In this document: positions 1 through 51,955 of the stretch, one piece after another
Layout: every line of letters begins with the position of its first letter
Position numbering within the stretch: the stretch's first letter is position 1
Program-made: the position numbers and the translations under genes
Notes under the pieces: generated by a model
The model's input: only the letters and a program-made list of their open reading frames with translations
Databases searched by the model: none
Told to the model about the DNA's origin: nothing
IMG/VR virus record: IMGVR_UViG_3300025930_000007
Span: 186,001-250,000 of that record
DNA length: 64,000 nt
Direction: 5' to 3' (one strand)

Positions 1-28
1 TGGTAGACCGCGTTTACCTCTGGGTCAA
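1..28 (-). promoter_or_regulatory. sigma70-like promoter TTGACC-17-TACCA(.) with GGTAAAC box, cut by window edge
   Basis: Minus strand TTGACC CAGAGGTAAACGCGGTC TACCA; same layout as promoters at 13021 and 42087. Confidence 0.6.
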
Positions 29-45
29 GATAAAAATGACGCGAG

Positions 46-432
46 CTACCAACCCATTTTCTCGCGCTGACGCTTGTTCAAGATGTCCTGCCAGGCGCTC
101 GGAGGCATCCAGAAGACGATATGTACGCCGGCGTTGATGGACTCGAAGTTCACTTGATCCCATCCGTTGTGCTTTAGGACTCTCATCACCTTTTCCCAGT
201 TCTTGTGTTCGTTTCTTACCGTGCTCCAAGGATCTTGAATCCAGCCGTATTCCGTCCCGACGATGACGACTCCAGGATCTGGATCATGCCAGCCTTGAGC
301 GACACCATCATCCGACCAGGAGGGACGGACTGACTCCAGATATTCCTTGCGAGCGGGAGGTCCATAAACTTGAACAAACGCCTCGCGGACGGCATCCGCG
401 AATTGATTGGCGATCTGGTCGATTTTGCTCAT
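46..432 (-). CDS. hypothetical protein ending ...REKMGW
   Basis: 128 aa ORF, last gene of the 2164-46 operon. Confidence 0.75.
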   Translation of the reverse strand: MSKIDQIANQFADAVREAFVQVYGPPARKEYLESVRPSWSDDGVAQGWHDPDPGVVIVGTEYGWIQDPWSTVRNEHKNWEKVMRVLKHNGWDQVNFESINAGVHIVFWMPPSAWQDILNKRQREKMGW

Positions 433-440
433 TGTGTCCC

Positions 441-1304
441 TCAGGGACAGCAGAAGGCCGTGTTGTCGGGGATGTTCCCGTTCGCGAAGAAGATGCTATC
501 GAAGGAGCCCTTCCCGTCGGCCTCATCGTTGTCCGTAATGATGATATCCATAACGGAAGGAGCTCCGGTGACAGGTCCAGGGACCAAAGGCGTGAGCGGG
601 ACATTCACGCCGTCCAACGTCAGAGTAAGGTTGCCCAGGCCATCACCCTTTAAGATGACCGAGTGCGTCGCCCCTTGCGCCGGAGTCCATGTGAACGTAT
701 CGAGAGTCGCCAGGTCTCCGGCAAAGCCAGTTCCATCACCCGTAAACTGGACGAGAGCCACCGCGTTACCGGCGCCGTTGAAAGCTCCGATGATATAGAC
801 CTTGTTGAAGGTCGGGGTAAAGTTGACCTCGGTGAACTCAAACCTCAACGTCCACGTCCCCGCCGGAGTCAGGACGGATTTTCTGATCTCGCCCTGAGGG
901 AGTCCGCTGAAGAGTGGACCGCTCCCGAGGTAGACCTTCTGGTCCGCGAAGACAACGGTGCCTGGTGGAGTTTCCACGCTCCAGCCGACGTTTCCCGTGG
1001 TAAAGCAATCGGCGAAGAGGTCGGCATTCACGCAGACAGGAGTAGGAGGCGGTGTCGGCGTAGGCGCAGGCGAAGGAGTAGGCGCAGGAGTCCCATTGTT
1101 TGCCCAAAGGCCAGAGGCCGGACCTCCGGTGGGCGAGAGACTCGGACGAGCCGTGGGCGTGGGTGCTGCCACGTTGAAGCAAACCATCTGAGGAGGCCGA
1201 TTAGGTTGCACGGGCGGCTTCACCGTGCATATGGCCTTCGGTGGTCGAACAACAGAGGGCGGCGCGGTCGGACGGGCAGGGCCCGGACGAGGCTTCCCCA
1301 TCAT
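441..1304 (-). CDS. Pro-rich N-terminus plus beta-rich domain; possible virion surface protein
   Basis: PAPTPSPAPTPTPPP linker then Gly/Thr/aromatic beta-strand pattern; start overlaps upstream stop. Confidence 0.6.
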   Translation of the reverse strand: MMGKPRPGPARPTAPPSVVRPPKAICTVKPPVQPNRPPQMVCFNVAAPTPTARPSLSPTGGPASGLWANNGTPAPTPSPAPTPTPPPTPVCVNADLFADCFTTGNVGWSVETPPGTVVFADQKVYLGSGPLFSGLPQGEIRKSVLTPAGTWTLRFEFTEVNFTPTFNKVYIIGAFNGAGNAVALVQFTGDGTGFAGDLATLDTFTWTPAQGATHSVILKGDGLGNLTLTLDGVNVPLTPLVPGPVTGAPSVMDIIITDNDEADGKGSFDSIFFANGNIPDNTAFCCP

Positions 1305-1606
1305 CAGGTCACCAGATCGATCATAACAACTTCGATATCGTCATCCAGCGGTCCCATGTCCGAACGCCAATCATCCCACTCGGAGATCGCATCCGTCCAC
1401 CGCTCTTCCTTGACTGCCTTGATGATGGAGCGAAGCTTGTCCGCATCATCCTCATCGAATCCGATCGAATCAAGGTCGGTTTGAGCCAGATATTCGATGC
1501 TCTTGGCCGCGGCTTGGTTCGCGACATGCTCGTTCAGGAACACGGTATAGTCCGTTTCCCTCGAGATGTCCTTGGAGATCAACAGCCATGCCTTATCAGC
1601 AGCCAT
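1304..1606 (-). CDS. hypothetical protein, distant member of the repeat-domain family at 45366-47058
   Basis: NEHVANQAA and WTDAISEWDDW resemble NEERAKQDA and VWGAYDEWHRF. Confidence 0.65.
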   Translation of the reverse strand: MAADKAWLLISKDISRETDYTVFLNEHVANQAAAKSIEYLAQTDLDSIGFDEDDADKLRSIIKAVKEERWTDAISEWDDWRSDMGPLDDDIEVVMIDLVT

Positions 1607-1609
1607 TTT

Positions 1610-2164
1610 TTATCCCTTGAAGTCGATCCGTGGATGTCTCTGCTCATCGATGACGAATCCAAAAGGACTACGTTCATCGTACTCGTCTGCCGGTACGACG
1701 AAATAAGCCGTGTCCTTGGGAAGCTTGTAGTCGGCCGTGCGGCCGCCGCGGCCAGCGAAGACCACGACTTGACCCGGAGGGACCTGGCTGTGCCAGTCGC
1801 CCCAAGCCGCCAAGCCGAGATAATCGTTCTTATGTAGAATCTTGAATGCGGTCTCGTCTTTAGCGCGAGATTCTCCCGGAGGAATAACTTCCTTGTAGTA
1901 AAGCTCGTATGCCATCGGAACGTAATTCTTCAGGATTTCCTTGGCCCGGGCTCTCTCTTCCTTGGTGAAGGCATTAGGGAAGACGGTCGCTACGATCGAC
2001 CAGTCGACATCCTCTTCATAAGCCCCATCCGGACTCCGCATGTATTCGGGAATGAGGAGGTTGAGTTGCTTTTCAACCAGGATGCCGCCATGACTGGCTG
2101 TCGAAATGCTCACGATTCCTGGAGAGAGAACCTTTCGCGACTGGACGGGGCCCCACTCGTGCAT
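1610..2164 (-). CDS. DUF7007-like protein
   Basis: WGPVQ...GIVSISTASHGG...YEEDVDWSIV pattern; AGGAG RBS. Confidence 0.6.
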   Translation of the reverse strand: MHEWGPVQSRKVLSPGIVSISTASHGGILVEKQLNLLIPEYMRSPDGAYEEDVDWSIVATVFPNAFTKEERARAKEILKNYVPMAYELYYKEVIPPGESRAKDETAFKILHKNDYLGLAAWGDWHSQVPPGQVVVFAGRGGRTADYKLPKDTAYFVVPADEYDERSPFGFVIDEQRHPRIDFKG

Positions 2165-2204
2165 GAGGATCTCCTAGGGGCGGAACAGTCGCTGAGTTTC
2201 TGGA

Positions 2205-2225
2205 CCCTCCAGGGGGACTGGAAGG
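2205..2225 (-). promoter_or_regulatory. 5' leader hairpin with TCCCC loop, after promoter TTGAAA-17-TATCCT
   Basis: Minus CCTTCCAG-TCCCC-CTGGAGGG; 14-bp identity with 45294-45307. Confidence 0.6.
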
Positions 2226-2264
2226 CCATCCCAAGGATACCTTCGGTAGGCCGCTCTTTCAAGA

Positions 2265-2771
2265 CTAGCGTGCAAGCCTCTCCAGAACCAGCTTGAGAGC
2301 CTCATCCGGTTCAAGGCGTTCAGTGTCGATCACGATCTCAGGATTTATCGGTGCCTCGTAGGGAGCTCCAAGGCCGGTGACATTCTTCTGCTCGTAGATT
2401 CCTCTCGTATCCCGGCTCTGGGCGACCGATTGGCTGCAGCGAGTGTAGATCTCGACGAACTGGATGCCGTCGCCGCCGGCTTCCGTCCTGGCCTCTTTCC
2501 TGCCCGCGAGATATGGCGAGACGCTCGCCACGACCGCGACCACCCCGTTACGAGCTAGGAGCCGCGCAATCCAGGCAATCCGCCTATTGTTTTCCAGCCG
2601 GTCTTCTTTGGAGAATCCCAGGGATGCTGAGATGACCTTCCGGATATCGTCGCCATCGATGATGTCGGCCGGCGTTCCCAGGTTTCGGTAATGACGGACG
2701 ATCCGGCGCGCGAGAGTTGTTTTTCCCGAAGCTGGAATGCCGGTGATCCAGAGGATGGGAGCCTTGCTCAC
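2265..2771 (-). CDS. cysC: adenylyl-sulfate (APS) kinase
   Basis: WITGIPASGKTT P-loop, DGDDIR, LGFSKEDR, YEAPINPE; GTG start overlaps upstream stop. Confidence 0.9.
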   Translation of the reverse strand: MSKAPILWITGIPASGKTTLARRIVRHYRNLGTPADIIDGDDIRKVISASLGFSKEDRLENNRRIAWIARLLARNGVVAVVASVSPYLAGRKEARTEAGGDGIQFVEIYTRCSQSVAQSRDTRGIYEQKNVTGLGAPYEAPINPEIVIDTERLEPDEALKLVLERLAR

Positions 2772-3007
2772 GCTTCGAGTTCCTGCGCTCCTACCCACAG
2801 TCGGAGGATCAGGTTCGCCAGTTCCTCTTGATGCTCATCGTTTGCCATATCAGCGATCGCCTGAAGATAGCCGGAATGATACGCACGCATCACGGACCCG
2901 ACAGGCGTCCTTAGCGCGGCTTCATAAGCTTCCTTGGCGCGCTCATACGCAAGATTCCGCTCTTCGACGGTGTGAAGTCCCATCAGCGGCTTTCTACGTG
3001 TCGTCAT
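2768..3007 (-). CDS. hypothetical protein
   Basis: 79 aa, GGGAG RBS, coupled to cysC. Confidence 0.65.
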   Translation of the reverse strand: MTTRRKPLMGLHTVEERNLAYERAKEAYEAALRTPVGSVMRAYHSGYLQAIADMANDEHQEELANLILRLWVGAQELEA

Positions 3008-3016
3008 AAGCGCTCC

Positions 3017-4788: not shown

Positions 4789-4816
4789 CGTGGCTCGCGG
4801 GCGGAATGCCTCTAGG

Positions 4817-4845
4817 GAAGGCCTAATGGGGGAGGGAAGGCCTTC
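4817..4845 (-). promoter_or_regulatory. 5' leader hairpin with TCCCTCCCCCATT loop
   Basis: Perfect 8-bp stem GAAGGCCT/AGGCCTTC. Confidence 0.65.
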
Positions 4846-4903
4846 TACGACACTGGTAACTATACCCTTGGCTCTAAAGGCCTTCAAGTTATAATCCTGC
4901 TGA

Positions 4904-12800: not shown

Positions 12801-13020
12801 ACGTGGGCGTTGAGGCCCTTGGGCGACTGGAAGAGCATCTCGAAGTAGTCGCGCGCCGACTGCTCGGTGAGCGCCGTGTCCTTGTCGACCATCGAGCCTT
12901 CGATCTCGATCAGGACGCGGATCTTCTTGACGGGTTTGGCCTTTTCCTTTTTCTGGAAAAGGGTCTTCTTGGTGGACATGATCAATCTCCTTCCTTGAAA
13001 CTGGTACCGTTACGGCAATA

Positions 13021-13049
13021 ATGGTAACTTGGTTTACCAGTCAGGTCAA
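13021..13049 (-). promoter_or_regulatory. promoter TTGACC-17-TACCAT with GGTAAACC box
   Basis: Minus TTGACC TGACTGGTAAACCAAGT TACCAT; intergenic, heads the 12985-5677 operon. Confidence 0.7.
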
Positions 13050-19828: not shown

Positions 19829-20219
19829 ACCTTCACCCCTGGATGTTCCTTAGGCAGCAGGGCGCCGACCCAAGACATTTCCCGCAAAGATCCGGCATCC
19901 CGCCGTGCTCGCTAAGTACGACTTCGCCCAGGCCCTTGCATGTCACGCATATATCGGTCGGCCAGCCGTCTCCAGCCTCCGGTCCCACGAAGCCGTGGTA
20001 GAAGTAGACGAACTCCTCGACTCCGAAACCGCCGCCGGCGGCGATGTCCTCAAGCGTCTGACCTGGAAAGGCTTTTGCGTAGGTCTGGTAGGCCTTCAGG
20101 GCGTCCTCCCAGAGGACGCACATCCCCTTCCTGCAGTTCGAGATGATGGGGAAGAATCTCAGCATGACGTCGGAACTCCGGTCCTACCCACCACCAATCT
20201 CCTTCCGGCTCTGTGGTTA

Positions 20220-20248
20220 GGTTTACCGGTTTACCGCCGATTTGTCAA
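20220..20248 (-). promoter_or_regulatory. promoter TTGACA-17-TAAACC with tandem GGTAAACC boxes
   Basis: Minus TTGACA AATCGGCGGTAAACCGG TAAACC. Confidence 0.65.
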
Positions 20249-26326: not shown

Positions 26327-26863
26327 TCAGGTAACGAGCTGCTTCATCTTGAGGTAGAGCCGTTCCATCTTCCCCCTGAGGGCGGCCAGATGGTCTCCAA
26401 TGGGAATCTCAAACCAGCTCTGCATCGGGCTCGATGCATCACCATAGAAGACATTCTCGATGATCTCGACATTCTCTTCTTCGTTCATGAGGAACACCAT
26501 CGGCGCATCTTTTCTCGGCTTAGCCCTGAAGGTGCAGCCCGAGATCGTCAGATTCCCCTCGGCGACCAGCGTGATCCCTTCCGGAAAGAAGATCGCCTCG
26601 TTGACGATATGGGTACCGCTTTTGACATAGACAGTGCCTCCCGCTTCGGGAAGGGCGTCAATTGCTTGCTGGATGCTCATTCCTGGCTGAACGACGATGA
26701 ACCCTGGAGACTGTACCGGGATGGTTGGGGCGATGGCCGTGCCGAAGCTGGCTGGGCATGGACTTGTCACCGGATAAGCTTGCTCGGCGAAGAGAGCATT
26801 GGGCGCTACTGCTGCAACGGCCGCGGTACCGCCCAGGAACTTCAGAAAGTCTCTTCTGTTCAT
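26327..26863 (-). CDS. Tat-signal protein with a beta-helix (pectin lyase-like) start motif
   Basis: MNRRDFLKFLGGTAAVAAVAP; SIQQAIDALPEAGGTVYVKSGTH. Confidence 0.7.
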   Translation of the reverse strand: MNRRDFLKFLGGTAAVAAVAPNALFAEQAYPVTSPCPASFGTAIAPTIPVQSPGFIVVQPGMSIQQAIDALPEAGGTVYVKSGTHIVNEAIFFPEGITLVAEGNLTISGCTFRAKPRKDAPMVFLMNEEENVEIIENVFYGDASSPMQSWFEIPIGDHLAALRGKMERLYLKMKQLVT

Positions 26864-26926
26864 GTCTCCCTCAGTTCTGAAAGATTGTATCCGGGATACC
26901 GGTATATTTCACCAGCTTCTCGAGGC

Positions 26927-33584: not shown

Positions 33585-34516
33585 TTTGCCTTGGCCTCTT
33601 TCTGCTCGCTCAGGGCCGCGTTGCAGATCACCTTGGGAACGTCTTCCAGCTTCTTGGCCCAGCCGAGAGGCTTATCCACGGTGTACTTCTTCTCGTCCCT
33701 TTCTCCATCATGGGTAACCCAGACGACGCGACGGAGATGGTAGCCCTCCGTATCGGCGTTCAGAAGCCAGCGGGCTTCGTACTTCTCCCGAACATAATCC
33801 CAGACCTTCATCGCATCGTCGATCTGAGTCGAGTAGTGGGGAAGATCTTCTCCACGCTCGCCAGCCTCCCCGACCGCGACCCCGCGATAGGTATTCGGAT
33901 CCTTCACGACCTTCTGACCAAAGATCTCCTCGGAGATCTTCCGATCCAGACGCAGGGCCTGTTCTTCGCTAAGCACCGAAGTTCTCTCCGCCGGCGGCGA
34001 CGATCGCTTCCTGTAGTTCCTGGAGGGCGGCGCATTCCGGAGCGCCGTTCACGCTCGGGAAGATCGTCATCCGGAGCTTCATGAAGGCCTCGACCGCCTC
34101 GAGCAGGCGGGCACTGCCTGCGATGCACTGCATGTCCGGATGCTCGCGGTCGGCGTCGACCATAAGACCTTCCGGTCCGCGCTGCCCCAGCTTGTGCTTC
34201 GGCCGGGGCATGAGAACGACAGGCCGGTGGCCATGGGCGCCCACCAGCGTGGAATCGTTCATCCAGACCCAGGGAGCCTTGGTCCGAACTACCCGCTTCG
34301 TTTCGCTCACAGTTTCCTCCTCCTGATTTCCATCTCTATCCGCTCCATGCGAATGTAGTTATCGTCCATGATCGCTTCCAAAGGCCGAGTGTCCGCACCG
34401 CACTTCAGACACACATGGTAGTCTTGCCAGTAGGCGCGTTCTCCCGGATAGCGCTCATCGAGCGTCCGCTTCTCCCACTGATGGCCCATGAAAAGACACT
34501 TCAGCCAAGCGATCAT
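33581..34516 (-). other. three short hypothetical ORFs
   Basis: 33581-33976 (PHYSTQIDDA), 33969-34310, 34307-34516. Confidence 0.6.
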
Positions 34517-35178
34517 TCTTCTTCGATCTTCAGAAACTTTTCACGAAACCATTCCCGATTCTCGCTGAATACCGGGGCCGTCTGAGCCTCCCCACGAACG
34601 ACGACCGTGCCGCGAATCAATTTCTCCGGAAAGGATTGCAACGGCTTATCAGCCAATTCCAGCATGGCGATCATCAGATCCGAATTCTTGCCATGGAGCT
34701 GCTTTGGGCTGAAGACGGACTGCGCCGCCGAGGAGATCGCGTTCCGGCGGCAATCCTGCTGTCTCCAGATGAAGTAATTGATGATGTCGCGCTCCGGAAT
34801 GGAACAAACCCGGCCGTCGAAATAGCCTGGAGAACCCCACCGCAGGCTGAATTCAGCACCCATGATTGAAGCCGATACGGAAGATATCTTCTGGACTACT
34901 CCGTCGAACCACTGCATGCTTTCGAACTTGTTGTAGTCGATGAAGAGTAGTGAGATTTCATCGGATTGCATGTAAGCCATGCGCGCCGGGACCTCGTCCA
35001 GAAGAGCGATGACGGCGTCCTTCATGGCCGTGTTCAGCTTGACGTCGAAGGGCTTCTCGCACTTCCTAGTCAGGGTATGGAAGGCCTTCCCGTCCAGCCG
35101 GATCACTGCTGGCGTCCGGATCAGAAGCCTCTGCCGGAAGACTTCCTCGTACGCCTTCATCCGCTCGCCGAGGTCCAT
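34513..35178 (-). CDS. thg1: tRNA(His) guanylyltransferase Thg1-like
   Basis: RMKAYE, IRLDGKAFH, YMQSDEISL, FDGR, YFIWRQQDCRRN. Confidence 0.92.
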   Translation of the reverse strand: MDLGERMKAYEEVFRQRLLIRTPAVIRLDGKAFHTLTRKCEKPFDVKLNTAMKDAVIALLDEVPARMAYMQSDEISLLFIDYNKFESMQWFDGVVQKISSVSASIMGAEFSLRWGSPGYFDGRVCSIPERDIINYFIWRQQDCRRNAISSAAQSVFSPKQLHGKNSDLMIAMLELADKPLQSFPEKLIRGTVVVRGEAQTAPVFSENREWFREKFLKIEEE

Positions 35179-35458: not shown

Positions 35459-36085
35459 TCATACCGCCTTCGTCTCCTTGCCCAAGAAGAGGCTGCAGGT
35501 CTTCTCGAACATGTCCTTGTTCGTGAAGAAGAACAGCTTGTTGCTGAGGTCCAACCAGCCCTGGACCCTTTTGCTCCATCCCTCCTTGGAATCCTTTGGC
35601 TCAAGAAGAGCAGTCCGAAACATGGGGGCTTCCTTGAACCGACGATACTGTTCCTGGCTGATCAGCGACCGGATGAATTTCGTGGCCGGCGCATGGTGAT
35701 CGGTCTTCGCAAGGAGATAGACGGGTTTCTTGACGCCCTTGACCGGCCTCTTGAAATGTCGCTCTTCCCATTTCTCGAAGGTCACATCCCCCATATCGAT
35801 CTCGAAGTTCGAGGTCGAGAGATCGGCGAGTGAAATGACCATCGACTGAAGGGTCCTGGGAATCTCGCCGAACTCGAATTCTGCAGAACCCATGTAGTCG
35901 AACGTGAAGATCTCCTGAAGGAGATCCATGGCCTCCTTCGACAAGCCTCCGTCTCGGAAGCCGCAGCCGAACGCGAAGATGCGGGCACCGAGATCCCGGG
36001 CATCTTCCCAGGGCTTGTTGAGGCGCTGGATCAGCCAGGGCTCACGCCACTCGCCGATGGGACCTGCCTTTTCGCCGTAGCCCAT
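35459..36085 (-). CDS. hypothetical phage protein
   Basis: FDYMGSAEFEFG motif. Confidence 0.7.
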   Translation of the reverse strand: MGYGEKAGPIGEWREPWLIQRLNKPWEDARDLGARIFAFGCGFRDGGLSKEAMDLLQEIFTFDYMGSAEFEFGEIPRTLQSMVISLADLSTSNFEIDMGDVTFEKWEERHFKRPVKGVKKPVYLLAKTDHHAPATKFIRSLISQEQYRRFKEAPMFRTALLEPKDSKEGWSKRVQGWLDLSNKLFFFTNKDMFEKTCSLFLGKETKAV

Positions 36086-36114
36086 ACCGATGGAATCTCC
36101 TTCCTACCGGAACT

Positions 36115-36144
36115 AGGTATACCGGTATACCTCTCGAATTGCAA
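36115..36144 (-). promoter_or_regulatory. promoter TTGCAA-17-TATACC overlapped by 18-bp palindrome AGGTATACCGGTATACCT
   Basis: Perfect palindrome 36115-36132 made of two GGTATACC boxes. Confidence 0.65.
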
Positions 36145-38720: not shown

Positions 38721-39255
38721 TTTTCGTTTCCTCAGGGGGTAGGACGAGTTTCATCTCACGATTGGGCGGAACGATGGGAGTCAAATGAACTTGCGGTGGT
38801 ACGGTCCTAGGATCCACTGACGAGTTCATCACCATCATATAAGACCCGGAATATCCAGTCGACCAGTACGAACTGGACATCATCAGTTTCTGGCCATTCA
38901 GGAAGTATTCCGGACGCCCACTGGAATCCGGGATCATCTTATGGTCATGCTTCTGGATCCGGTTGTCCCACCTCATTCCACAGAGAGCGCACGTCTCAAA
39001 ATACGCAAATTCTTCAGCGCAACCCTTACAGGAATGCCAAGTCTTGATGCCGTGCTTGCAGCGAACGGCGGCATCGTTGGCCTTCTGGGAAGACTTATTG
39101 TCCTGAATCTCCTTGATCCAGCCGGCGACCTGGGCGACGAGGATAACGCCTGCCCAGGCAAGCGAGGAGACCGGCTTGATGCCCCGATTCCAGTCGACCA
39201 TCATGGCCACCAGCATCACTGGAATCGCTGCATACCAGAACACCAAGTATTTCAT
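38713..39255 (-). CDS. membrane protein with Cys/His motifs
   Basis: Two TM helices, CKHG...CKGC. Confidence 0.6.
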   Translation of the reverse strand: MKYLVFWYAAIPVMLVAMMVDWNRGIKPVSSLAWAGVILVAQVAGWIKEIQDNKSSQKANDAAVRCKHGIKTWHSCKGCAEEFAYFETCALCGMRWDNRIQKHDHKMIPDSSGRPEYFLNGQKLMMSSSYWSTGYSGSYMMVMNSSVDPRTVPPQVHLTPIVPPNREMKLVLPPEETKNA

Positions 39256-40262
39256 CCCTTGACCTCGTTCAATACGATTGCCTGACGCATCCAGTGCCCA
39301 TGGGTTTGGACGTGGTTCTTCCTAACGTATTTCGCAACAACATCCTTAAATTCCTTGTACTGGAAGGCCCGTGCGACGCGAACGACGTAACCTTCGCAGG
39401 GATCTCCGTTGTATAGGTCGATCTCGATGGCCTTCGTCCAACTCTCGTCCCAGAGACCACGATGGAACACGGGCACCGTCTTCAGATCCAGGAGCGCGCA
39501 CCAGCTCTCCGTCTCCTCCCAGGAGAGGCATTCGTTCTTCTCGTTCCAGATCGAGAAGACCAGGAAGTGCGCCGGCAGATTCAGGTAATGGATCGAATGC
39601 TTGGCGTAGAGGTTCTCGCCGCAGATCCTCCAACCAGGCGGAATATCATGTCCGATCCGGCGATGCAGGCCCCAGAGCCAGTCCCTGGAGGGATGCGGCG
39701 CCGTGTCGATCGAGCGGGCATGGAAACCATCCGGGTACATGGATGTCTGCTCCCCGTCCATCTTGATCGTGATCACGACCGCCTGGCCCTCCAGGCCGTG
39801 GAGCGATGGGATGATCTTGTCGTCGCTTGAGACGTTCGGGCTCCAGGGAAGGTGATGGGTCCGCTGGTATTTCACCCGATCCGTGAAGAGGTGCAGGACC
39901 GGCTTCAGGATCTTCTGGACGCTCTCGTCATGGAAGAGTTCGCCCTTCAGACGCTGGCCGTTCGGGAGGATCGGATTGCCCCACTTGTCCACCGGCTGGT
40001 CCGAGTAGAAGTGAGGGGGCAGGAGAACCTCCTGGATCCCGCAGCGCTCCCGGAGCTCGTCGCACGAAAGCTCCGTGGACTCTGCCAGGAGATGATGGAC
40101 CTCGCAGACGGAGGCCCCATTCGAGACGTAGTATCCCCCATCGGGCCACAGTCGGCGTTCGATGATGTGGTGAGCATCCTTCGCCGGCTGCCCGCAGACA
40201 ACGCATTCCCAGCCGTCTCGCTTGAAGACGGCATTCCTGAACTCGTCTCTACTTAGCAACAT
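39252..40262 (-). CDS. HNH domain fused to an RNA-ligase-family nucleotidyltransferase
   Basis: RDGWECVVCG...DAHHIIER...CEVHH; KYQRTHHLPWS, KMDGE, CGEN, EGYVVR, KYVR. Confidence 0.85.
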   Translation of the reverse strand: MLLSRDEFRNAVFKRDGWECVVCGQPAKDAHHIIERRLWPDGGYYVSNGASVCEVHHLLAESTELSCDELRERCGIQEVLLPPHFYSDQPVDKWGNPILPNGQRLKGELFHDESVQKILKPVLHLFTDRVKYQRTHHLPWSPNVSSDDKIIPSLHGLEGQAVVITIKMDGEQTSMYPDGFHARSIDTAPHPSRDWLWGLHRRIGHDIPPGWRICGENLYAKHSIHYLNLPAHFLVFSIWNEKNECLSWEETESWCALLDLKTVPVFHRGLWDESWTKAIEIDLYNGDPCEGYVVRVARAFQYKEFKDVVAKYVRKNHVQTHGHWMRQAIVLNEVKG

Positions 40263-41419: not shown

Positions 41420-42079
41420 TCAGTTCCCCTTCCTCTTGAAGATCCCCAGGCTGTCATGAATCCCATCCCAGACCGGGATCTGGACCTGTTTCACCATCTC
41501 CCAGGTCTTTTCGATCTCCGGATCATAGCCGGTGCAGCCGTCATCGATCTCGCCGACGTAGGCCACCGTATCGCCCTTGTAACCGTTGAAGATCTTCACG
41601 TTGTCCACGCTCGGCCAGATAACCAAGAGCGTCCGCTCATGGACGTCCTTCCTTCGGAAGATCTGTTGGTAGCTGACCGGCTCAATCTGGAAGAACGTTC
41701 CGACCGTGAACGGATATAAGCCCGAACCGTCATCACAGGCAATCACGTCGGCGCCGAGAAGCTGAAGGAGCTTGGACCAGTATCCCGTTCCGGCACCGAT
41801 TTCGACGATGCCCTTTGGGGATACTTTCAGAATCTCCCGAAGGATCTTTTCCGTAGGCACTGCGAAGCCGTACTTCTCGATGCACTTCGTTCTCGCATGG
41901 AACTCGGAGAGGATCTTCTCGGAATAGTTCGGATCGTAGATATTGCGGCTATTGTGTCCGAGCCACCACTCCGATAGAAAGGGATTATGCTCCCGATCCC
42001 AAGTTGTCGGAGAAAAGGGCGTCGCCCACTTCTCGGCCCACTTCTCCATCCAGGCCTTATCTTTTTCTAGCATCGTCAC
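41420..42079 (-). CDS. class I SAM-dependent methyltransferase-like protein
   Basis: IVEIGAGTGYW, LLVIWP, YVGE. Confidence 0.7.
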   Translation of the reverse strand: MTMLEKDKAWMEKWAEKWATPFSPTTWDREHNPFLSEWWLGHNSRNIYDPNYSEKILSEFHARTKCIEKYGFAVPTEKILREILKVSPKGIVEIGAGTGYWSKLLQLLGADVIACDDGSGLYPFTVGTFFQIEPVSYQQIFRRKDVHERTLLVIWPSVDNVKIFNGYKGDTVAYVGEIDDGCTGYDPEIEKTWEMVKQVQIPVWDGIHDSLGIFKRKGN

Positions 42080-42086
42080 ACCGCCA

Positions 42087-42115
42087 ATGGTATTCTTGGT
42101 TTACCTCTTAGTCAA
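42087..42115 (-). promoter_or_regulatory. promoter TTGACT-17-TACCAT with GGTAAACC box
   Basis: Minus TTGACT AAGAGGTAAACCAAGAA TACCAT, 7 nt before GTG. Confidence 0.7.
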
Positions 42116-45243: not shown

Positions 45244-45289
45244 GAGAAAAAACCATTTCGGGCGGAATGAGTTCTACCGGACCTTTAGA

Positions 45290-45310: not shown

Positions 45311-45365
45311 ACAGCTTAATCATACCGCTTAACCTTGGGACTTCAATGGGTTTTTCCCTGTCCGT

Positions 45366-46412: not shown

Positions 46413-47058
46413 GGGTGAACCCAAAATGGTGAAAGGTGTCCCGCCTGGTCAACCGATACCAGTGTTCGATGTTCTTCGGGTCTTTCACTTCCTCGTCGTA
46501 GCTCTTGGAGATCGTCATCACCGTATTCATGATCTCGGCGAAGGGCGGAGGCTGGGCGCCGCTGTCTACGAACCTCTGGTTGACCTCCGTAGCGATCGTC
46601 CTCCAGGTCTCGTGCAGCGTCTTGAGGAAATTCCACTGCCAGTCCATCTGTTTCCCGCGATCCATGCTTCGTGCCAAGCTTTCGGCTGGGTGGTACTTGG
46701 GTGTCACGGTGGGCCCTGGTCCGTCCACGATGACCGTTCCGATCAGGACCCAGAGCGGCGTTGGAAGAACGTCTTCCCAACGATTCATGAACCGATGCCA
46801 TTCGTCGTAGGCGCCCCAGACTTCATCGTCCTCGAGGAGGACGCCCAGGGATTCGAGCATCTGCTGGGCATCCTCGATGAATCCAGGGAAGTTCCGTTCA
46901 TAGCCCCAGACGGTCGCATATTGGGGCAACTCTTCATCGAATTTCGATGCAAGAGCGGCAAGATGCCGGGCAGTGTCGACTTTGGCGATCTCCTCCAAGG
47001 CATGGACGCTCGTGCAGTCCTTCTTGAAGTCCAGGATCCTGCAAATCCGCCAAGACAT
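46399..47058 (-). CDS. paralog carrying the same unknown domain
   Basis: VWGAYDEWHRF...PLWVLIGTVIV; GGAG RBS before ATG 47058. Confidence 0.75.
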   Translation of the reverse strand: MSWRICRILDFKKDCTSVHALEEIAKVDTARHLAALASKFDEELPQYATVWGYERNFPGFIEDAQQMLESLGVLLEDDEVWGAYDEWHRFMNRWEDVLPTPLWVLIGTVIVDGPGPTVTPKYHPAESLARSMDRGKQMDWQWNFLKTLHETWRTIATEVNQRFVDSGAQPPPFAEIMNTVMTISKSYDEEVKDPKNIEHWYRLTRRDTFHHFGFTHETL

Positions 47059-47074
47059 TAGAGGATCTCCATGT

Positions 47075-47187
47075 CCGCGGCGGGGGAGGGTGAGCTGCGG
47101 CAAGAAGAAGATACCATACCTCGGCTGGACTAACAAGCCACTACAAGCTATGATTCTGGGAGCGGCAACACCCTCCCCCTCGCCGCT
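47075..47187. promoter_or_regulatory. divergent promoters, each followed by an ACCCTCCCCC-loop hairpin
   Basis: Minus CCGCAGC-TCACCCTCCCCC-GCCGCGG (47075-47100); plus AGCGGC-AACACCCTCCCCCTC-GCCGCT (47161-47187) after TGGACT-17-TATGAT. Confidence 0.65.
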
Positions 47188-47205
47188 GATCGACTTGAGG
47201 ATTCC

Positions 47206-48534
47206 ATGAGTCTGATCACCGGCCCCGTAGCGCTAATGCGTCTGGTCACCGTCGAGACCGTCACCGACCTCGATCGCCTTATGACCAGGATGGGCCTGCC
47301 GTCTCAGGATGCTTCCGTCGAGACCAAGTTCAACGGATGGCTCACCCAGGCCGCCGGCGGCCGCCTCTACTCGCGGCGTGGGAAGGATCTCACCGACAAG
47401 TTTCCGCATATCGCCAAGCTGGTCGCTCCTTTCAAGAAAGAGCATCTGATCGGTGAGCTCGTCTATTTCGACGAGAACGGCGTCATGCAGGAGCCAGCCG
47501 TCACGACCATCGCGGGGACCAAGGATCATCGCGAAGCCATCCGGAAGATGAAGGAGATGCCAGGACACTTCGATTATGTGGTCTTCGACGTCCTGGCCGC
47601 AGACGGGCACGACATCACCGATCAGCCGACCTCTGTTCGGCGCGCAGTTTTGGACGAATGCTTCTGCAATTCCGGGCTCACGCTCTCCAATCCTCAGCCT
47701 CTTTCCATGCTCCAGAAAGTCTATGACGAAGGCGTCGCGGCCGGCGCCGATGGCGTCGTGATCAAGAATCTCAGGGCACCCTATCTCTGGAAACCCTTCG
47801 GTCAAAGCGAAGTCCAGCCTGTTGGATACTGGTGGAAGCTCAAGCCAGCCTTCACGGACAACTTTGTGGTCACCGGGGTCCACTACGGACCAAAGGGAAG
47901 ATTGCTGGCCACTCTCTCTCAATATCACCGTGGACAGCTTGTCGACGTCTCCGATGTCGGCAATTTTGCCGCGCCGGTCGCCAAAGAATTCATTCAGCGC
48001 ATCACCAAAGGGCCATTCCTGGTTGAGATCGAATATCTCTCCAGATTCCCTGATCCTCCGGGAGCTCTCCAGCATCCACGCTTCATCCGTTTCCGCGAAG
48101 ACCAGGACCTCGACTCAGCTCAGCTACCGGCAAAATACGGAATGCACGGGCCATCGATTGGCGTTCCGCTTCGCGGTTATGCAAACTACTGGATCAAGCC
48201 CGATGGCGAAGTAATCGAGTTCACCGAGCCCGAGACTCATGAACTCTATTCTTGGGATGCTGGTTTCGGGACCGTTGGCGAGGCGATCGAGGCTGGCTGG
48301 ATCCGCGCCTTCGAATATCGGGACAAATTGGGCTTCGACCTCTTGAATATTGAGGACCCCAACACATTCTCCAGACTGACTGAATTCCTAGAAAAGTTCT
48401 ACGCCGAGCATGGCCCCTTCAGCGCCGTAATCGACTTCACGCTTCCGCAACACGGCTTCATCACCATCGATCCCGAAGATCTTTCCTCCGAATCCATCCC
48501 GGATCTCCTTCGGATCGGTCTTCGGAGAGCGTAA
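47206..48534 (+). CDS. ATP-dependent DNA ligase with an appended C-terminal domain
   Basis: ETKFNG (I), LIGELV (III), VVFDVL (IIIa), DGVVIK (IV), WWKLK (V), HPRFIRFRED (VI); then WIKPDG...H...GWIR. Confidence 0.8.
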   Translation: MSLITGPVALMRLVTVETVTDLDRLMTRMGLPSQDASVETKFNGWLTQAAGGRLYSRRGKDLTDKFPHIAKLVAPFKKEHLIGELVYFDENGVMQEPAVTTIAGTKDHREAIRKMKEMPGHFDYVVFDVLAADGHDITDQPTSVRRAVLDECFCNSGLTLSNPQPLSMLQKVYDEGVAAGADGVVIKNLRAPYLWKPFGQSEVQPVGYWWKLKPAFTDNFVVTGVHYGPKGRLLATLSQYHRGQLVDVSDVGNFAAPVAKEFIQRITKGPFLVEIEYLSRFPDPPGALQHPRFIRFREDQDLDSAQLPAKYGMHGPSIGVPLRGYANYWIKPDGEVIEFTEPETHELYSWDAGFGTVGEAIEAGWIRAFEYRDKLGFDLLNIEDPNTFSRLTEFLEKFYAEHGPFSAVIDFTLPQHGFITIDPEDLSSESIPDLLRIGLRRA

Positions 48535-48535
48535 G

Positions 48536-49144: not shown

Positions 49145-49147
49145 AAG

Positions 49148-50344
49148 ATGATCGTCTATGTCGGAGCTGGATCGGGAGAATTCCGGGATCTGGTGATCGC
49201 GGCCGGACATGGCCAGATGGTCTCCCCGCAACCCGGCGCCTTCCGCATACCGAAGCACGGACGGTGGGTCTTCGATAACGGAGCCTATACCGATTGGCTC
49301 AACGGTGTCACTTTTGATGATGCAAATTACCTGAAGAGACTCTCTCAGATCTCCTTCCTCTCGGACGATAGAATTCCCGACTGGTGCGTCGTCCCGGACA
49401 TCGTCGCGGATCCGACCAGCCTTTCCTATTCGCTCCGCTGGCGCCAGGCGCTCTACGATGCCGATCGCCGGCTCCGCTGGTATCTCGCGATCCAGGACTT
49501 CATGACTCCCGAAGACGTCCTCCACGCCCTTTGCCTCGAACCGTTCGACGGCCTCTTCATCGGTGGATCGACCGACTGGAAATGGGAAACCGCGGCCAAA
49601 TGGATCCAGTGGGGCCATGAACACGGTCTTCCCGTCCATCTGGCGCGCGTCAATGGACCAGGCCCTCTCCAAGCTGCCTTTGATGTGGGCGCCGATTCCA
49701 TCGACGGAACCGGTTGGGTTCGCGCCGGCGCCAAGTGGTATCCGGCCCTGAAGAACGTTCCCGTCCCTTCGACGGGACTCTTCGACAGGGAACATCCGGA
49801 GATCCCCAAGCGCTGGCTCAAGTTCGGCCAGTATCTCCAGAGCATCTGGGGTGAGCGCGACTGGAAGCGTTGGGCGAAGGTCGAAGTGCCCTCTCTTCAG
49901 AATGTCGCGGCCTTCAACGCCATGAGCCCCGACGAATTCCTCTCCTGGATTGAGAACGAATACGTCTCAAAAGCTCCATCTGGTCCTGAGGATTGGCGCG
50001 GGAAAACCGCCCAGCTTTACCTCGATGAGGTCCGGAAGAAGGTGAGTGAAGTGGATGAAAAGGAGCTCGAAATCTGGAAACGATGGGTCCTGTGGGAGAT
50101 CGAAAGGATCCTCGTCACCCCTATACCGCCGGCCCCAGAGATGCCCAGGTACGGAATCGTAGAAGGCAAGGCCTTGCCGCTTCCGAAAGCTCTGGAACTG
50201 ACCAAGGGACAGCTTGAAAAATGCGAGCAGACCGGAACCGAAATCATCATGGTTCACGGGCCTGGTGGACAGGTGCTTGCCTCTTACCCCGTCGTCAGAG
50301 CAACATCCTCTGAACAGGCTCTACGGATGATGCGGGAGCCATAA
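49148..50344 (+). CDS. TGT/DpdA-like guanine transglycosylase-fold protein with C-terminal extension
   Basis: FDNGAY, VVPDIV, LAIQD, LFIGGS, VHLARVN, ADSIDGTGW. Confidence 0.65.
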   Translation: MIVYVGAGSGEFRDLVIAAGHGQMVSPQPGAFRIPKHGRWVFDNGAYTDWLNGVTFDDANYLKRLSQISFLSDDRIPDWCVVPDIVADPTSLSYSLRWRQALYDADRRLRWYLAIQDFMTPEDVLHALCLEPFDGLFIGGSTDWKWETAAKWIQWGHEHGLPVHLARVNGPGPLQAAFDVGADSIDGTGWVRAGAKWYPALKNVPVPSTGLFDREHPEIPKRWLKFGQYLQSIWGERDWKRWAKVEVPSLQNVAAFNAMSPDEFLSWIENEYVSKAPSGPEDWRGKTAQLYLDEVRKKVSEVDEKELEIWKRWVLWEIERILVTPIPPAPEMPRYGIVEGKALPLPKALELTKGQLEKCEQTGTEIIMVHGPGGQVLASYPVVRATSSEQALRMMREP

Positions 50345-50783
50345 CTCCCGGCGCAAGATATTCGAGAGCCTTCTCCACCTCTTCCGGAAGCGGCTTTAAG
50401 CCCTGCATCCCCGTAAACGGATAAGGTTTCACGAGCCGCAGGTTCCTCGTCTGCCAGGCGAAGCGTTTCGGCATGTAATTCCCAAGGATCGCTTCCATGG
50501 GCTCCGGCTTCGCGAGCTCAGTCTTCACGCAGTCGAAGAGATCCACGACCGCGATGATGGAGCCCAGCGGCCAGTTCCTGGGGATCTCGATCTTGACGCC
50601 GGCATCCTCAAGAATGTCTTCTGCCAGCTCTTCTGGAGTACCGTCCTTGATGGCGGTCTTGTTCTTGGCGACGTGGATCGCGAGGAGACCCCGATAGCTG
50701 GTCGACCAGCTCCTTGTCTCCCATTTCTTGTATCCGAGAGCCATGAAGGATCCCCAGGGCTCCCAGAGCGACAGGATCTTCAT
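50295..50783 (-). CDS. ASCH domain protein
   Basis: LSLWEPWGS...GYKKWETRSW..SYRGLLAIH, GMQGL. Confidence 0.85.
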   Translation of the reverse strand: MKILSLWEPWGSFMALGYKKWETRSWSTSYRGLLAIHVAKNKTAIKDGTPEELAEDILEDAGVKIEIPRNWPLGSIIAVVDLFDCVKTELAKPEPMEAILGNYMPKRFAWQTRNLRLVKPYPFTGMQGLKPLPEEVEKALEYLAPGVMAPASSVEPVQRMLL

Positions 50784-51142
50784 GCTAGCGAAGCCCATCC
50801 CGCGGCCGCTGCTGCGTGAGCCGCCATTTTGCCTGCCAGGGCGACGCGATCTCTCGTACCGGAGATTGAAAGACCGGATTTCGAATGGGCTTCGGCTTCT
50901 TTTCCTTGGGTTCCGGAGGAGGAAGAATGACCGTAACCTCTTTTCGAATCGTGATCTGGTAGGTGGCGACGTTGTTGTCCGTGATTTCGGTATGGCTCAT
51001 CGGGATGGTGCTATCCGCAGTGAGCGGATGCTGATGGATTTCAACGGTTGGCGAGCAATTGGTGCTCGTGGGTGTGTAATTGAGCTGCATGAACATGTTA
51101 AACGAGTTTACTGCTCCTCGTTTTTCATGTCAAGCTATGCGT

Positions 51143-51619
51143 CTACTTAGGCTTACCGACGACGATGCTCGCCAGCACCACAAGAGCGCCGATCTCCGTC
51201 CAGAAGGCGATCTTGTTGAGCATCGAACCGTTCCCGGTGAGGAGCTGAGTGGCGCCGGCGCCCAGGCCTACGAGCGCCGCCGTCACGCCGATCGGCGTGC
51301 TGTTATTCGAAGGTGCTGCGGCTGGGGTTGCTTGGCCCATTTCACGGATGGAATGGCAGAAGCCGTCATATCCCATCACTTCATCCGGTGTGCAGAACTG
51401 ATCGTCGATTGGCCGCCTGTTGTAACTACCCATCTGCATGATCGGCTGGCAGGTCCCATCGGCGCCGACCTCTTCATTGGGGCCACAGAGCCCATTCTCG
51501 AATGGAGCACGATGGGTCATGACGCCGAAGCCGCGCTCAAAGCTATGCCCGGCGCCGCCGAAGCCGCCGCCGCCACGGCCGAGATTGAGGCGCAGGGTTG
51601 TCGGTTTCCAGGTGTACAT
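51143..51619 (-). CDS. membrane protein with two Cys mini-repeats and LG/MG motifs
   Basis: CGPNEEVGADGTC / CTPDEVMGYDGFC; EMGQA; two hydrophobic helices. Confidence 0.7.
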   Translation of the reverse strand: MYTWKPTTLRLNLGRGGGGFGGAGHSFERGFGVMTHRAPFENGLCGPNEEVGADGTCQPIMQMGSYNRRPIDDQFCTPDEVMGYDGFCHSIREMGQATPAAAPSNNSTPIGVTAALVGLGAGATQLLTGNGSMLNKIAFWTEIGALVVLASIVVGKPK

Positions 51620-51955
51620 GGAATCCCCCCTATTGTAGAAACTGGTCGCCGGGGGAAGCGACCGGACAGCCTGATTATACTTTGAGCCCAGGCGATCTCA
51701 ACGGGAATTTAGACCAACAGCCACACCAATAAGTACGATGACCGCAGGAATCGAATAGGACATTGAGGTCCCAAGTAATCTTGAAAGTCCTATTCCACAT
51801 CAAGCCATAGAGCACCACGCCGTAGGGCTTGTACAAGATCTCGATTCCCCACCATCCAAAACGAAGCTGCAGCCACGGAGCCCATGGAATCGTCAGTAGC
51901 ATGGCTTCACCCGGTTACTGGTATACCGCCGTTTACGAGTCATCGCATTTTCTTC

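What the first reader, a model, noticed from the sequence alone, without database searches (positions are those of the whole stretch)
1..51927. GGT(A/T)(A/T)ACC operator-like box inside promoters of accessory operons
Seen: the box lies in the spacer or over the -10 at 1-28 (GGTAAACG), 13031-13038, 20220-20235 (tandem), 36116-36131 (tandem, perfect palindrome) and 42098-42105. Degenerate or isolated copies are at 26893-26908 and 51920-51927. Three promoters share TTGAC[CT]-17-TACCA(T). They head the small-ORF and RNA-repair operons. Inference: an early regulon controlled by one DNA-binding protein, complementary to the C-loop class.
Basis: partly seen in the sequence, partly recalled or inferred. 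Interest (0 to 1): 0.6.

Follow-up and report, generated by a model that had tools for sequence, protein, structure and literature searches.

The report
Repressor-type operator box in megaphage promoters
A six-base word (GTAAAC, often GGTAAACC) sits inside about 25 host-type promoters of a soil phage with a genome of at least 350 kb, stays fixed in related phages while its surroundings change, and is most likely the binding site of a phage-encoded double ribbon-helix-helix repressor that switches these promoters off.

Summary
GGTWWACC occurs 7 times in the window against 0.81 expected. The conserved core is GTAAAC. It is the most intergenic-enriched of 2037 hexamers over 349 kb of this phage (42 of 77 copies in 9.7% of the sequence, p about 1e-22). 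It lies in the spacer, over the -10, or just after the -10 of about 25 sigma-70-type promoters. Fourteen of the 34 most stringently defined promoters carry it, against 0.3 expected.

In orthologous promoters of related soil phages (46-95% protein identity, GC 51-70%), GTAAAC is invariant while the spacer and even the -10 change.

A candidate binder turned up. It is a 137-aa protein with two tandem ribbon-helix-helix repeats (P0001, contig G001 92978-93391, outside the window). Its own promoter carries two boxes between the -10 and the ribosome-binding site in nearly all relatives. The best structural match is AvtR, a single-chain double-RHH viral autoregulator.

The likeliest mechanism is promoter occlusion with autoregulation. 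Binding, repression and early timing remain untested, because no RNA data exist and the host is unknown. GGTATACC sites may be weaker variants, and 26893-26908 is not a member.

This is a new variant of a known kind and is moderately interesting.

The parts
1..28 (-). Box promoter cut by the window edge: -35 TTGACC at 23-28, box GGTAAACG at 11-18, -10 TACCA(T) at 1-5 with its last base outside the window. It heads an RNA-ligase-like gene just left of the window (L040:19363-19941:-).
13021..13049 (-). Box promoter: -35 TTGACC at 13044-13049, box GGTAAACC at 13031-13038, -10 TACCAT at 13021-13026. It heads a long run of small ORFs that starts at 12979.
20214..20248 (-). Tandem boxes GGTAAACC GGTAAACC at 20220-20235 (8-bp period), 7 nt after -35 TTGACA at 20243-20248. 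The -10 is weak (TAAACC, inside the second box). The same tandem arrangement (GGTAAACTGGTAAACC) occurs in related phages L061 and L064.
36109..36144 (-). Tandem GGTATACC GGTATACC at 36116-36131, a perfect 16-bp palindrome, after a weak -35-like TTGCAA at 36139-36144 and 31 nt before the start codon of the 208-aa gene 35459-36085. Possible variant operator (GTATAC for GTAAAC). Membership uncertain.
42087..42115 (-). Box promoter: -35 TTGACT at 42110-42115, box GGTAAACC at 42098-42105, -10 TACCAT at 42087-42092. It heads the operon 42073 to about 36163, which includes an RNA ligase (39252-40259).
51105..51133 (-). Promoter TTGACA-17-TAAACT in which GTAAAC (51106-51111) overlaps the -10.
51920..51936 (-). 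Composite site GTAAAC-GGC-GGTATACC (GTAAAC at 51931-51936, GGTATACC at 51920-51927), an imperfect inverted repeat of the kind seen in the box promoters. No clear -35 is associated with it.
26887..26908 (-). NOT accepted as a member. This is a separate small palindrome (GGTATCC-C-GGATAC, preceded by AATATACC) upstream of a twin-arginine-signal protein gene. It has no GTAAAC core and no recognisable promoter.

Best explanation
The box is the high-affinity half of an operator that overlaps host-type (sigma-70-like, TTGACA-N16-18-TAnnnT) promoters of a soil phage with a genome of at least 350 kb.

Shown:
- The core GTAAAC lies 1-9 nt after the -35 and 3-11 nt before the -10 in 19 promoters. In six more it overlaps the -35 or the -10, or follows the -10 directly.
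- It is followed by an S-rich 3-nt gap and a degenerate inverted copy (G-W-W-T-A-C) that merges with the -10.
- It is invariant in orthologous promoters of diverged relatives.

Inferred:
- A phage protein bound there blocks RNA polymerase.
- The binder is P0001, a 137-aa single-chain protein with two ribbon-helix-helix repeats that share the same strand TTTIKVS. It would form one pseudo-symmetric DNA-reading sheet and bind one short, nearly palindromic box per molecule.
- Neighbouring molecules would occupy the second half-site (9 bp centre to centre) or a tandem box (8 bp).
- P0001 is made from a strong host-type promoter that carries two boxes between its -10 and its ribosome-binding site. 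It would therefore accumulate after infection, then shut off its own gene and the roughly 25 box promoters. This is a delayed negative-feedback switch.
- Because the operator is a palindrome whose promoter-proximal half must double as the -10, the free half always reads GTAAAC on the transcribed strand. That explains both the orientation bias and the odd TACCAT and TATACT -10 hexamers.
For: Enrichment:
- 7 against 0.81 in the window.
- GGTAAACC is the top intergenic 8-mer: 10 intergenic against 2 coding, 48-fold.
- GTAAAC ranks first of 2037 hexamers: 42 of 77 intergenic against 9.7% expected, p about 1e-22. The median intergenic share of same-composition hexamers is 12%.

Promoter location:
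- 14 of 34 stringent intergenic promoters carry the box. Shuffled spacers give a mean of 0.32 and a maximum of 3.
- The position varies by several bases relative to both hexamers, as for a separate protein rather than a sigma contact.

Inverted-repeat extension:
- G at +9 in 13 of 19 sites, T at +12 in 14 of 19, A at +13 in 13 of 19, C at +14 in 11 of 19.
- A perfect GTAAAC-GGG-GTTTAC occurs at G000 155282.

Footprints:
- VWA-gene promoter in 6 lineages: TTGACA and GTAAAC are invariant while the spacer and -10 vary (A2). The same holds in L064.
- The regulator's own promoter across the related lineages recovered: GTTTAC, GTTTAA or GTTTAT lies 1-2 nt after the -10, and a second GTTTAC lies before the RBS, with the intervening sequence diverged and GC ranging from 51 to 70%.

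Binder:
- P0001 has two repeats.
- The AF2 model is beta-alpha-alpha twice, with pLDDT about 80 in the repeats.
- Best VIA-align matches are AvtR 4hv0 (Z 5.7, 77 aligned residues), permuted single-chain Arc 1u9p (Z 3.9) and F relaxosome chain 9f0x_E (Z 3.8). RHH antitoxins rank lower.
- The strand residues are nearly invariant in 21 homologues.
- P0001 has no paralogue in 349 kb.
- Neither HTH_3 nor a sigma-70 region 2 was detected in either record.
- AvtR binds DNA as a monomer, represses its own gene and has about eight conserved sites in its virus (PMC5569661).
Against: - No binding, repression or timing data exist. No RNA run holds the phage.
- P0001 fails Pfam thresholds. It gets only DUF7557 at 22 bits against a cut-off of 25. 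Foldseek found nothing significant, and the VIA Z scores are low in absolute terms.
- The link between P0001 and the box rests on boxes at its own promoter, which any box-regulated gene would also have.
- Lineages L054 and L063 keep the same strand residues but have few GTAAAC copies and only 5-of-6 variants at their own promoters.
- The P0001 gene is not in the window, nor in record G000. It lies on the overlapping contig G001, which contains the window sequence at 99.999% identity.
- The tandem direct repeats (8-bp period) and the inverted arrangement (9-bp) imply two binding geometries.
- Gene calls are from my own heuristic caller.
Confidence: 0.55

Rival explanations
1. The box is a genuine operator, but it is bound by a different protein: a host regulator or another, unrecognised phage protein. 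P0001 would then be just one more gene of the regulon.
For: The P0001-box link is circumstantial. A 794-aa phage protein carries an N-terminal HTH-like segment. Most small ORFs have no annotation. L054 and L063 keep P0001-like strands but have few boxes.
Against: The box persists in phages with GC from 51 to 70%, which probably infect different hosts, always together with a P0001 homologue. Neither record contains a Cro/CI-type HTH. A short, nearly palindromic 6-8-bp unit, tandem 8-bp arrays and paired sites 8-9 bp apart are what RHH proteins read. Two conserved boxes at the P0001 promoter, in RNAP-blocking positions, are typical of RHH autoregulation.
Confidence: 0.25
2. The bound protein acts mainly as an activator or a concentration-dependent dual regulator, as AvtR does, or it tunes promoter strength rather than shutting promoters off.
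For: AvtR both activates and represses (PMC5569661). The tandem-box promoters at 20220 and 36116 have poor -10 hexamers and might need help. In L055 a palindromic box lies upstream of a -35.
Against: Nearly all sites lie between or over the -35 and -10 of near-consensus promoters with optimal 16-18-bp spacers, or directly after the -10. These positions occlude RNAP. MerR-type spacer activation needs 19-20-bp spacers, and none is seen.
Confidence: 0.1
3. GTAAAC is a promoter element in its own right, for example the -35 of an ECF-like or phage-specific sigma factor paired with the CGTGAC/CGTAAC element found 5-6 nt after the -10, giving dual promoters.
For: About ten box promoters have YGTRAC(GA) 22-25 nt downstream of GTAAAC, which resembles ECF promoters of the form GTAAC...CGT.
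Against: The downstream element keeps a constant distance from the -10 (5-6 nt) but not from GTAAAC (14-19 nt). It also occurs in a promoter without the box (super-contig 63980), and it is absent from the conserved VWA promoter in six lineages. Neither record has a sigma-70 region 2, and only sub-threshold region-4-like hits inside large proteins were found. The distance from the box to the -35 and to the -10 varies by up to 8 nt.
Confidence: 0.05
4. The box has no function and is a shared remnant of duplicated promoter cassettes.
For: Four promoters (window 1-28, 13021-13049, 42087-42115 and G000 167118) resemble each other beyond the box: a TACCAT -10 followed by T, and CGTGAC downstream.
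Against: In six to twelve diverged lineages the hexamer is invariant while the adjacent spacer bases, and even the -10, change. The box occurs in promoters with otherwise unrelated spacers. It is depleted in coding sequence relative to same-composition words.
Confidence: 0.03

Closest known systems
AvtR of Acidianus filamentous virus 6 (PDB 4hv0)
   Same: A single polypeptide with two tandem RHH motifs that binds DNA as a monomer, represses its own gene, has several conserved imperfect-inverted-repeat sites in the viral genome, and spreads to weaker sites (PMC5569661). It is the best structural match to the P0001 model (Z 5.7).
   Different: AvtR comes from an archaeal virus and acts on archaeal TATA/BRE promoters. 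Identity to P0001 is 17% with no detectable sequence homology. It has about 8 sites with a different consensus, against about 25 sites inside bacterial -35/-10 promoters here. Binding by P0001 has not been shown.
Arc and Mnt repressors of phage P22; CopG (RHH repressors acting at promoters)
   Same: These are phage or plasmid RHH proteins whose operators lie between or over the -35 and -10 elements. Two RHH units bind adjacent half-sites cooperatively, and the genes are autoregulated (established knowledge; the RHH review material is quoted).
   Different: They are two-chain dimers that control one or two promoters. Here the protein is a single-chain pseudo-dimer and the box is dispersed over about 25 promoters of a genome of at least 350 kb.
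MetJ met-boxes
   Same: A short 8-bp, nearly palindromic unit used in tandem head-to-tail arrays, with one RHH dimer per box (my own knowledge). Tandem 8-bp arrays occur at window 20220 and 36116, and in relatives L061 and L064.
   Different: Most sites here are a single box plus a degenerate inverted copy at 9-bp spacing. There is no evidence for a co-repressor, and the sequences are unrelated.
Dispersed operators of P1 C1 and the 'stoperators' of cluster A mycobacteriophages
   Same: Many copies of one short site are spread over a large phage genome in intergenic regions, mostly in one orientation relative to transcription, and are controlled by one phage repressor (my own knowledge).
   Different: Those systems maintain lysogeny, and stoperators act outside promoters. 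Here nearly all sites lie inside promoters, the orientation bias follows from the geometry of a palindrome, and no prophage copy was found in 185,579 reference genomes, although a tyrosine recombinase gene is present.
TraY of the F plasmid (relaxosome chain E, 9f0x)
   Same: Tandem RHH repeats in one chain (my own knowledge of TraY). Third-best structural match (Z 3.8).
   Different: TraY is an accessory factor at oriT for conjugative nicking, not a promoter-occluding regulon repressor.

Membership tests
Promoter-overlapping repressor operator | The sequence is over-represented and confined to non-coding or promoter DNA | tested here: met
   7 against 0.81 in the window. GTAAAC ranks first of 2037 hexamers for intergenic enrichment, p about 1e-22. 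GGTAAACC is 10 intergenic against 2 coding.
Promoter-overlapping repressor operator | It overlaps the RNA-polymerase binding elements (-35, spacer, -10 or start site) | tested here: met
   19 promoters have it in the spacer and 6 have it over the -35 or -10 or directly after the -10. 14 of 34 stringent promoters carry it, against 0.32 expected.
Promoter-overlapping repressor operator | It is conserved in orthologous promoters while the flanks diverge | tested here: met
   A2: TTGACA and GTAAAC invariant in 6 lineages, with the -10 and spacer variable. A3 and searches show the same for the regulator's own promoter.
Promoter-overlapping repressor operator | It is bound by a specific protein, and binding lowers transcription | not testable with these tools
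   No RNA run holds the phage. No protein-DNA tool was available.
Ribbon-helix-helix (MetJ/Arc/CopG) superfamily, for P0001 | A strand-helix-helix unit, two of which pair to form a DNA-reading two-stranded sheet | tested here: met
   The AF2 model has E21-27 H28-37 H44-51 and E69-75 H76-85 H92-99. Top VIA matches are double-RHH or single-chain RHH proteins. This is a prediction only, and the Z scores are modest.
Ribbon-helix-helix (MetJ/Arc/CopG) superfamily, for P0001 | A significant sequence-profile match to an RHH family | tested here: not met
   Pfam gives only DUF7557 at 22 bits (cut-off 25) and no RHH_1. PHROGs gives nothing. PDB sequence search gives nothing relevant. The Atlas gives only weak CopG and ParG leads.
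Single-chain double-RHH regulators (AvtR type) | Two RHH repeats in one polypeptide joined by a linker | tested here: met
   Repeats at residues 19-55 and 66-103 both carry the strand TTTIKVS. A repeat HMM hits both halves, with i-E 2e-22 and 1e-21.
Single-chain double-RHH regulators (AvtR type) | The gene is autoregulated through sites at its own promoter | tested here: inconclusive
   Two boxes lie between the -10 and the RBS and are conserved in nearly all the related lineages recovered. Repression itself was not tested.
MetJ-type tandem 8-bp boxes | Head-to-tail arrays of an 8-bp unit | tested here: inconclusive
   Present at window 20220 and 36116 and in L061 and L064. Most sites, however, are a single box with an inverted partner at N3 spacing.
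ECF-sigma or phage-sigma promoter (box as a -35 element) | Fixed spacing to a cognate -10, and a sigma factor gene in the phage | tested here: not met
   Spacing to the CGT element is 14-19 nt and tracks the sigma-70 -10 instead. The element is absent from A2. No Sigma70_r2 was found.
MerR-type spacer-binding activation | Over-long 19-20-bp spacers | tested here: not met
   All box promoters have 16-18-bp spacers.
Lysogeny repressor with dispersed operators (P1 C1, stoperators) | A temperate life style with prophage copies | tested here: inconclusive
   A tyrosine recombinase gene lies behind a box promoter. No relative of P0001 was found in GTDB reference genomes. One related contig sits in an NCBI MAG.

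The most novel reading that the evidence does not exclude
A family of uncultivated soil and rhizosphere phages with genomes of at least 350 kb runs a genome-wide early-promoter shut-off through a single-chain double-RHH repressor, a bacterial-virus counterpart of archaeal AvtR. The 6-bp core operator has co-evolved with the promoters themselves. The unusual -10 hexamers (TACCAT, TATACT preceded by G) would then serve both as sigma-70 -10 elements and as the second operator half-site. This class would be wired in parallel to a second, mutually exclusive promoter class marked by C-rich-loop leader hairpins.
Probability: 0.4. Interest if true: 0.65.

Novelty: new variant of a known kind. Interest (0 to 1): 0.55.

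Why it matters
Transcription programmes of very large uncultivated phages are almost unknown, because they have no host and no RNA data. This work provides a concrete hypothesis that can be tested in vitro. It names a defined operator word, about 25 target promoters with coordinates and one candidate regulator gene, and it is supported by cross-phage conservation.

If confirmed, it would be the first regulon map for this phage group. It would show that a single-chain double-RHH protein can act as a global regulator in a bacterial virus. It would also supply a compact repressor and operator pair that works inside standard sigma-70 promoters, which is useful as a genetic part. The two mutually exclusive promoter classes suggest a simple logic for temporal control in a genome with several hundred genes.

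Tried and rejected
- DNA similarity to known phages: only a 109-bp RNA-ligase match to Caulobacter phage CcrSC.
- Distant relatives of the 217-aa gene at window 41420-42073 (28-35% identity) do not share the box.
- IMG/VR holds no P0001 relative other than the same phage, and GTDB genomes hold none.
- ECF-like dual-promoter idea: rejected.
- Toxin-antitoxin or co-repressor idea for the translationally coupled downstream 169-aa gene. The coupling is conserved in all lineages. Its model shows only a generic SH3/KOW/Tudor-like barrel at Z about 5 and no toxin fold. This is left open, not supported.
- Foldseek on the P0001 model: nothing significant.
- A literature search for the 8-mer returned only primer hits.
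- RNA evidence: there are no RNA runs. DNA contigs from four soil or rhizosphere runs are almost identical to the window (8 SNPs in 6 kb, none in a box), so microdiversity gives no footprint.
- The reversed-pattern control printed by the genome search (15 against 11) is not a fair null because of CA/TG dinucleotide bias. I used intergenic-versus-coding counts and shuffles instead.
- No alternative genetic code was needed.

Full report
**What the window is.** The window is G000:C1:72601-136600 of a 236-kb IMG/VR virus record. Its GC content is 56% and its ribosome-binding sites are strong (GGAAGGAGAT). A second record, G001 (IMGVR_UViG_3300025930_000007 = Ga0207701_10000001, 266 kb), matches G000 1-153090 at 99.999% identity over its positions 113401-266490 and adds 113 kb that G000 lacks. 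Joined, they give 349,490 bp of one phage. In this 'super' contig, window w corresponds to position w + 186000. The phage has at least 43 tRNA genes, collagen-like tail fibres, helicases, a primase, methyltransferases, a terminase-like gene and a tyrosine recombinase. It occurs in rhizosphere and soil metagenomes from about 15 studies. Gene calls are from my own codon-bias and SD-based caller, so intergenic fractions (8-10%) are approximate.

**The observation.** GGTWWACC occurs 7 times in the window against 0.81 expected. Genome-wide, GGTAAACC is the most intergenic-enriched 8-mer, with 10 intergenic and 2 coding copies. Over 349 kb, GTAAAC is the most significantly intergenic of 2037 hexamers. 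It has 42 of 77 copies in 9.7% of the sequence (p about 1e-22), while same-composition hexamers have a median intergenic share of 12%. Among GTNNAC words only AA (55% intergenic) and AT (40%) stand out; the rest are at 0-14%.

**Anatomy.** A strict scan (one mismatch or fewer to TTGACA, 16-18 nt, TAnnnT, at least 60% intergenic) finds 34 promoters. Fourteen carry the hexamer, 11 as GTAAAC and 3 as GTTTAC. Shuffled spacers give a mean of 0.32 and a maximum of 3. When weaker -35 hexamers are allowed, 19 promoters have GTAAAC in the spacer on the transcribed strand. Six more have it over the -35 (super 23223, 315849), over the -10 (140338, 237105) or directly after the -10 (55985, 92904). Its distance from the -35 is 1-9 nt and from the -10 is 3-11 nt. 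That variation is too loose for a sigma contact and fits a separate protein.

Anchored on GTAAAC, the logo is g-GTAAAC-S-S-S-G-W-W-T-A-C. This is an imperfect inverted repeat GTAAAC-N3-GTTTAC. It is perfect at G000 155282 and matches 5 of 6 at G000 63013 and at window 1-28. The right half merges with the -10. GTCTAC+CAT and GAATAC+CAT give the odd TACCAT hexamers, and G+TATACT gives GTATAC. By inspection, G stands 3 nt before the -10 in all 7 promoters with N6 spacing, against 8 of 20 promoters without a box. A palindrome whose promoter-proximal half is constrained by the -10 always shows its free half as GTAAAC on the transcribed strand. The orientation bias therefore needs no asymmetric protein.

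**Conservation.** The candidate regulator has homologues at 46-95% identity in soil metagenome contigs, which allows promoter comparisons.
- Upstream of the neighbouring VWA gene, six lineages keep TTGACA and GTAAAC in every sequence, while the seven spacer bases between them, the bases after the box and the -10 itself differ (A2). L064 shows the same.
- Orthologous promoters before a DUF192 gene also keep the box.
- The tandem GGTAAAC-T-GGTAAACC recurs in L061 and L064.
- The AT-rich hexamer survives in a contig of 70% GC (L055, GTAAAC-CA-GTTTAC).

This rules out chance and simple cassette inheritance.

**A candidate binder.** The gene behind the promoter at super 92904 (G001:92978-93391, 93 kb from the window on the same contig) encodes P0001, 137 aa. 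It has two repeats, PTTTTIKVS...DETLRRLL and PMTTTIKVS...DMTLGRLL. AlphaFold2 on 21 homologues gives strand-helix-helix twice, with pLDDT about 80 in the repeats and disordered ends and linker. Foldseek finds nothing significant. The exhaustive VIA-align search ranks AvtR first (Z 5.7, rmsd 3.7, 77 residues), then permuted single-chain Arc (3.9) and an F-relaxosome chain (3.8), with RHH antitoxins lower. These Z scores are low, but the top matches are known single-chain or double RHH folds. Pfam gives only a sub-threshold DUF7557 hit.

The strand residues are nearly invariant across homologues. P0001 has no paralogue in 349 kb. Neither record has a Cro/CI-type HTH or a sigma-70 region 2. Its own promoter has GTTTAC 2 nt after the -10 and again just before the RBS. 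Across the related lineages recovered, the first site is GTTTAC, GTTTAA or GTTTAT in all but the L054/L066 branch. The second is GTTTAC in most. The 14-17 nt between the two sites are unrelated from lineage to lineage. AvtR, the closest fold, binds as a monomer, represses its own gene and has several conserved sites in its virus (PMC5569661).

**Mechanism proposed.**
- Shown: the location, enrichment, symmetry and conservation of the box; and the predicted fold and repeat structure of P0001.
- Inferred: P0001 binds one box per molecule through a pseudo-symmetric sheet. A second molecule takes the degenerate half-site over the -10 (9 bp centre to centre) or a tandem box (8 bp). This blocks RNA polymerase. 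P0001, made from a strong host-type promoter, then feeds back on itself and on about 25 promoters.

I put 0.9 on the box being a functional cis-element, about 0.65 on repression and about 0.55 on the whole chain including P0001.

**Rivals.**
- Another protein may bind the box. I cannot exclude this, because any regulon member would carry boxes.
- An activator or dual role is possible for the two tandem-box promoters, which have poor -10 hexamers.
- An ECF-like reading (GTAAAC as a -35 paired with the YGTRAC element after the -10) fails. That element tracks the sigma-70 -10, occurs without the box, is absent from the conserved VWA promoter, and no sigma gene is found.

- Probable: 51920-51936, a composite with GTAAAC.
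- Uncertain: the 36116 GGTATACC palindrome. GTATAC is a plausible weaker half-site, but it also resembles the phage's TATACT -10.
- Rejected: 26893-26908.

**The regulon and the C-loop class.** 'Early regulon' and 'accessory operons' are only partly borne out. Targets include small-ORF runs, RNA ligases and a Thg1-like gene. They also include a recombinase, a VWA protein, methyltransferase, HAD and AAA ATPase genes, and part of the tRNA region. No box promoter lies in the tail-fibre block at 0-22 kb. The 'complementary to the C-loop class' remark holds. Hairpins with C-rich loops follow 6 of 18 promoters without a box and 0 of 16 with one (Fisher p = 0.02).

**Limits.** There is no RNA, no host and no binding assay. 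The strains in public runs are too similar to give a footprint. The regulator gene lies outside the window and outside G000.

Noticed in passing
window 51674-51702, 51956-51984; G000/G001 joined contig 25108, 119772, 342470, 343334: A second promoter class. Sigma-70-type promoters without the box are followed 10-25 nt later by a hairpin with a C-rich loop (for example ggtcgct-TCCCCC-ggcgacc). It is seen in 6 of 18 promoters without a box and 0 of 16 with one. It may be a leader RNA element or a protein-binding hairpin.
   Followed up: partly
G000 40484, 147913, 181401, 185441 (all outside the window): A third promoter class has TATATACTC (or TATACACT) in the spacer, giving two TATAC elements 12 bp apart. 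It could be a weak variant of the same operator or a site for another factor.
   Followed up: no
G000 222198-222436 and 41979-42016 (outside the window): Iteron-like TGTTAG repeats, including tandem TGTTAGaaTGTTAGgcTGTTAGgt, lie in the gap between a helicase gene and a primase-like gene. A second, inverted cluster occurs elsewhere. This is a candidate replication origin.
   Followed up: no
whole record; G001 1-113400: G000 (236 kb) and G001 (266 kb) overlap by 153 kb at 99.999% identity and extend in opposite directions. The phage genome is therefore at least 349.5 kb, larger than either record. At least 43 tRNA genes lie at G001 51-84 kb.
   Followed up: yes
about ten box promoters, e.g. window 42074-42081 and 13007-13014: A conserved YGTRAC(GA) element lies 5-6 nt after the -10, around the expected transcription start, in about ten box promoters. 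It also occurs in one promoter without the box (joined contig 63980). Its function is unknown; it may be a conserved 5' end of the transcripts.
   Followed up: partly
window 26327-26863 (-): A phage gene with a twin-arginine (Tat) signal peptide (Pfam TAT_signal, 27 bits), preceded by the small palindrome GGTATCC-C-GGATAC at 26887-26900.
   Followed up: no
window 34513-35178 (-), 39252-40259 (-), 47206-48534 (+); L040:19363-19941 (-); L046:1772-2257 (-): A nucleic-acid repair and tRNA toolkit: a Thg1-like tRNA-His guanylyltransferase, two RNA-ligase-family proteins, an ATP-dependent DNA ligase and a HAD domain of the 'Swiss army knife' RNA-repair type. Several of these genes lie behind box promoters.
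   Followed up: partly
L039:14428-15525 (-) = G000 47028-48125 (outside the window): A tyrosine recombinase/integrase gene (Phage_integrase, 69 bits) lies directly behind a box promoter. It raises the question of a temperate or plasmid-like life style, but no prophage relatives were found in reference genomes.
   Followed up: partly
L032:2489-2998 (+) and orthologues in 8 lineages: The 169-aa gene that overlaps the stop codon of the double-RHH gene by 4 nt is conserved in every relative. It has invariant Cys and His residues, and its N-terminal part folds as an SH3/KOW/Tudor-like barrel (Z about 5 only). It may be a partner of the regulator.
   Followed up: partly
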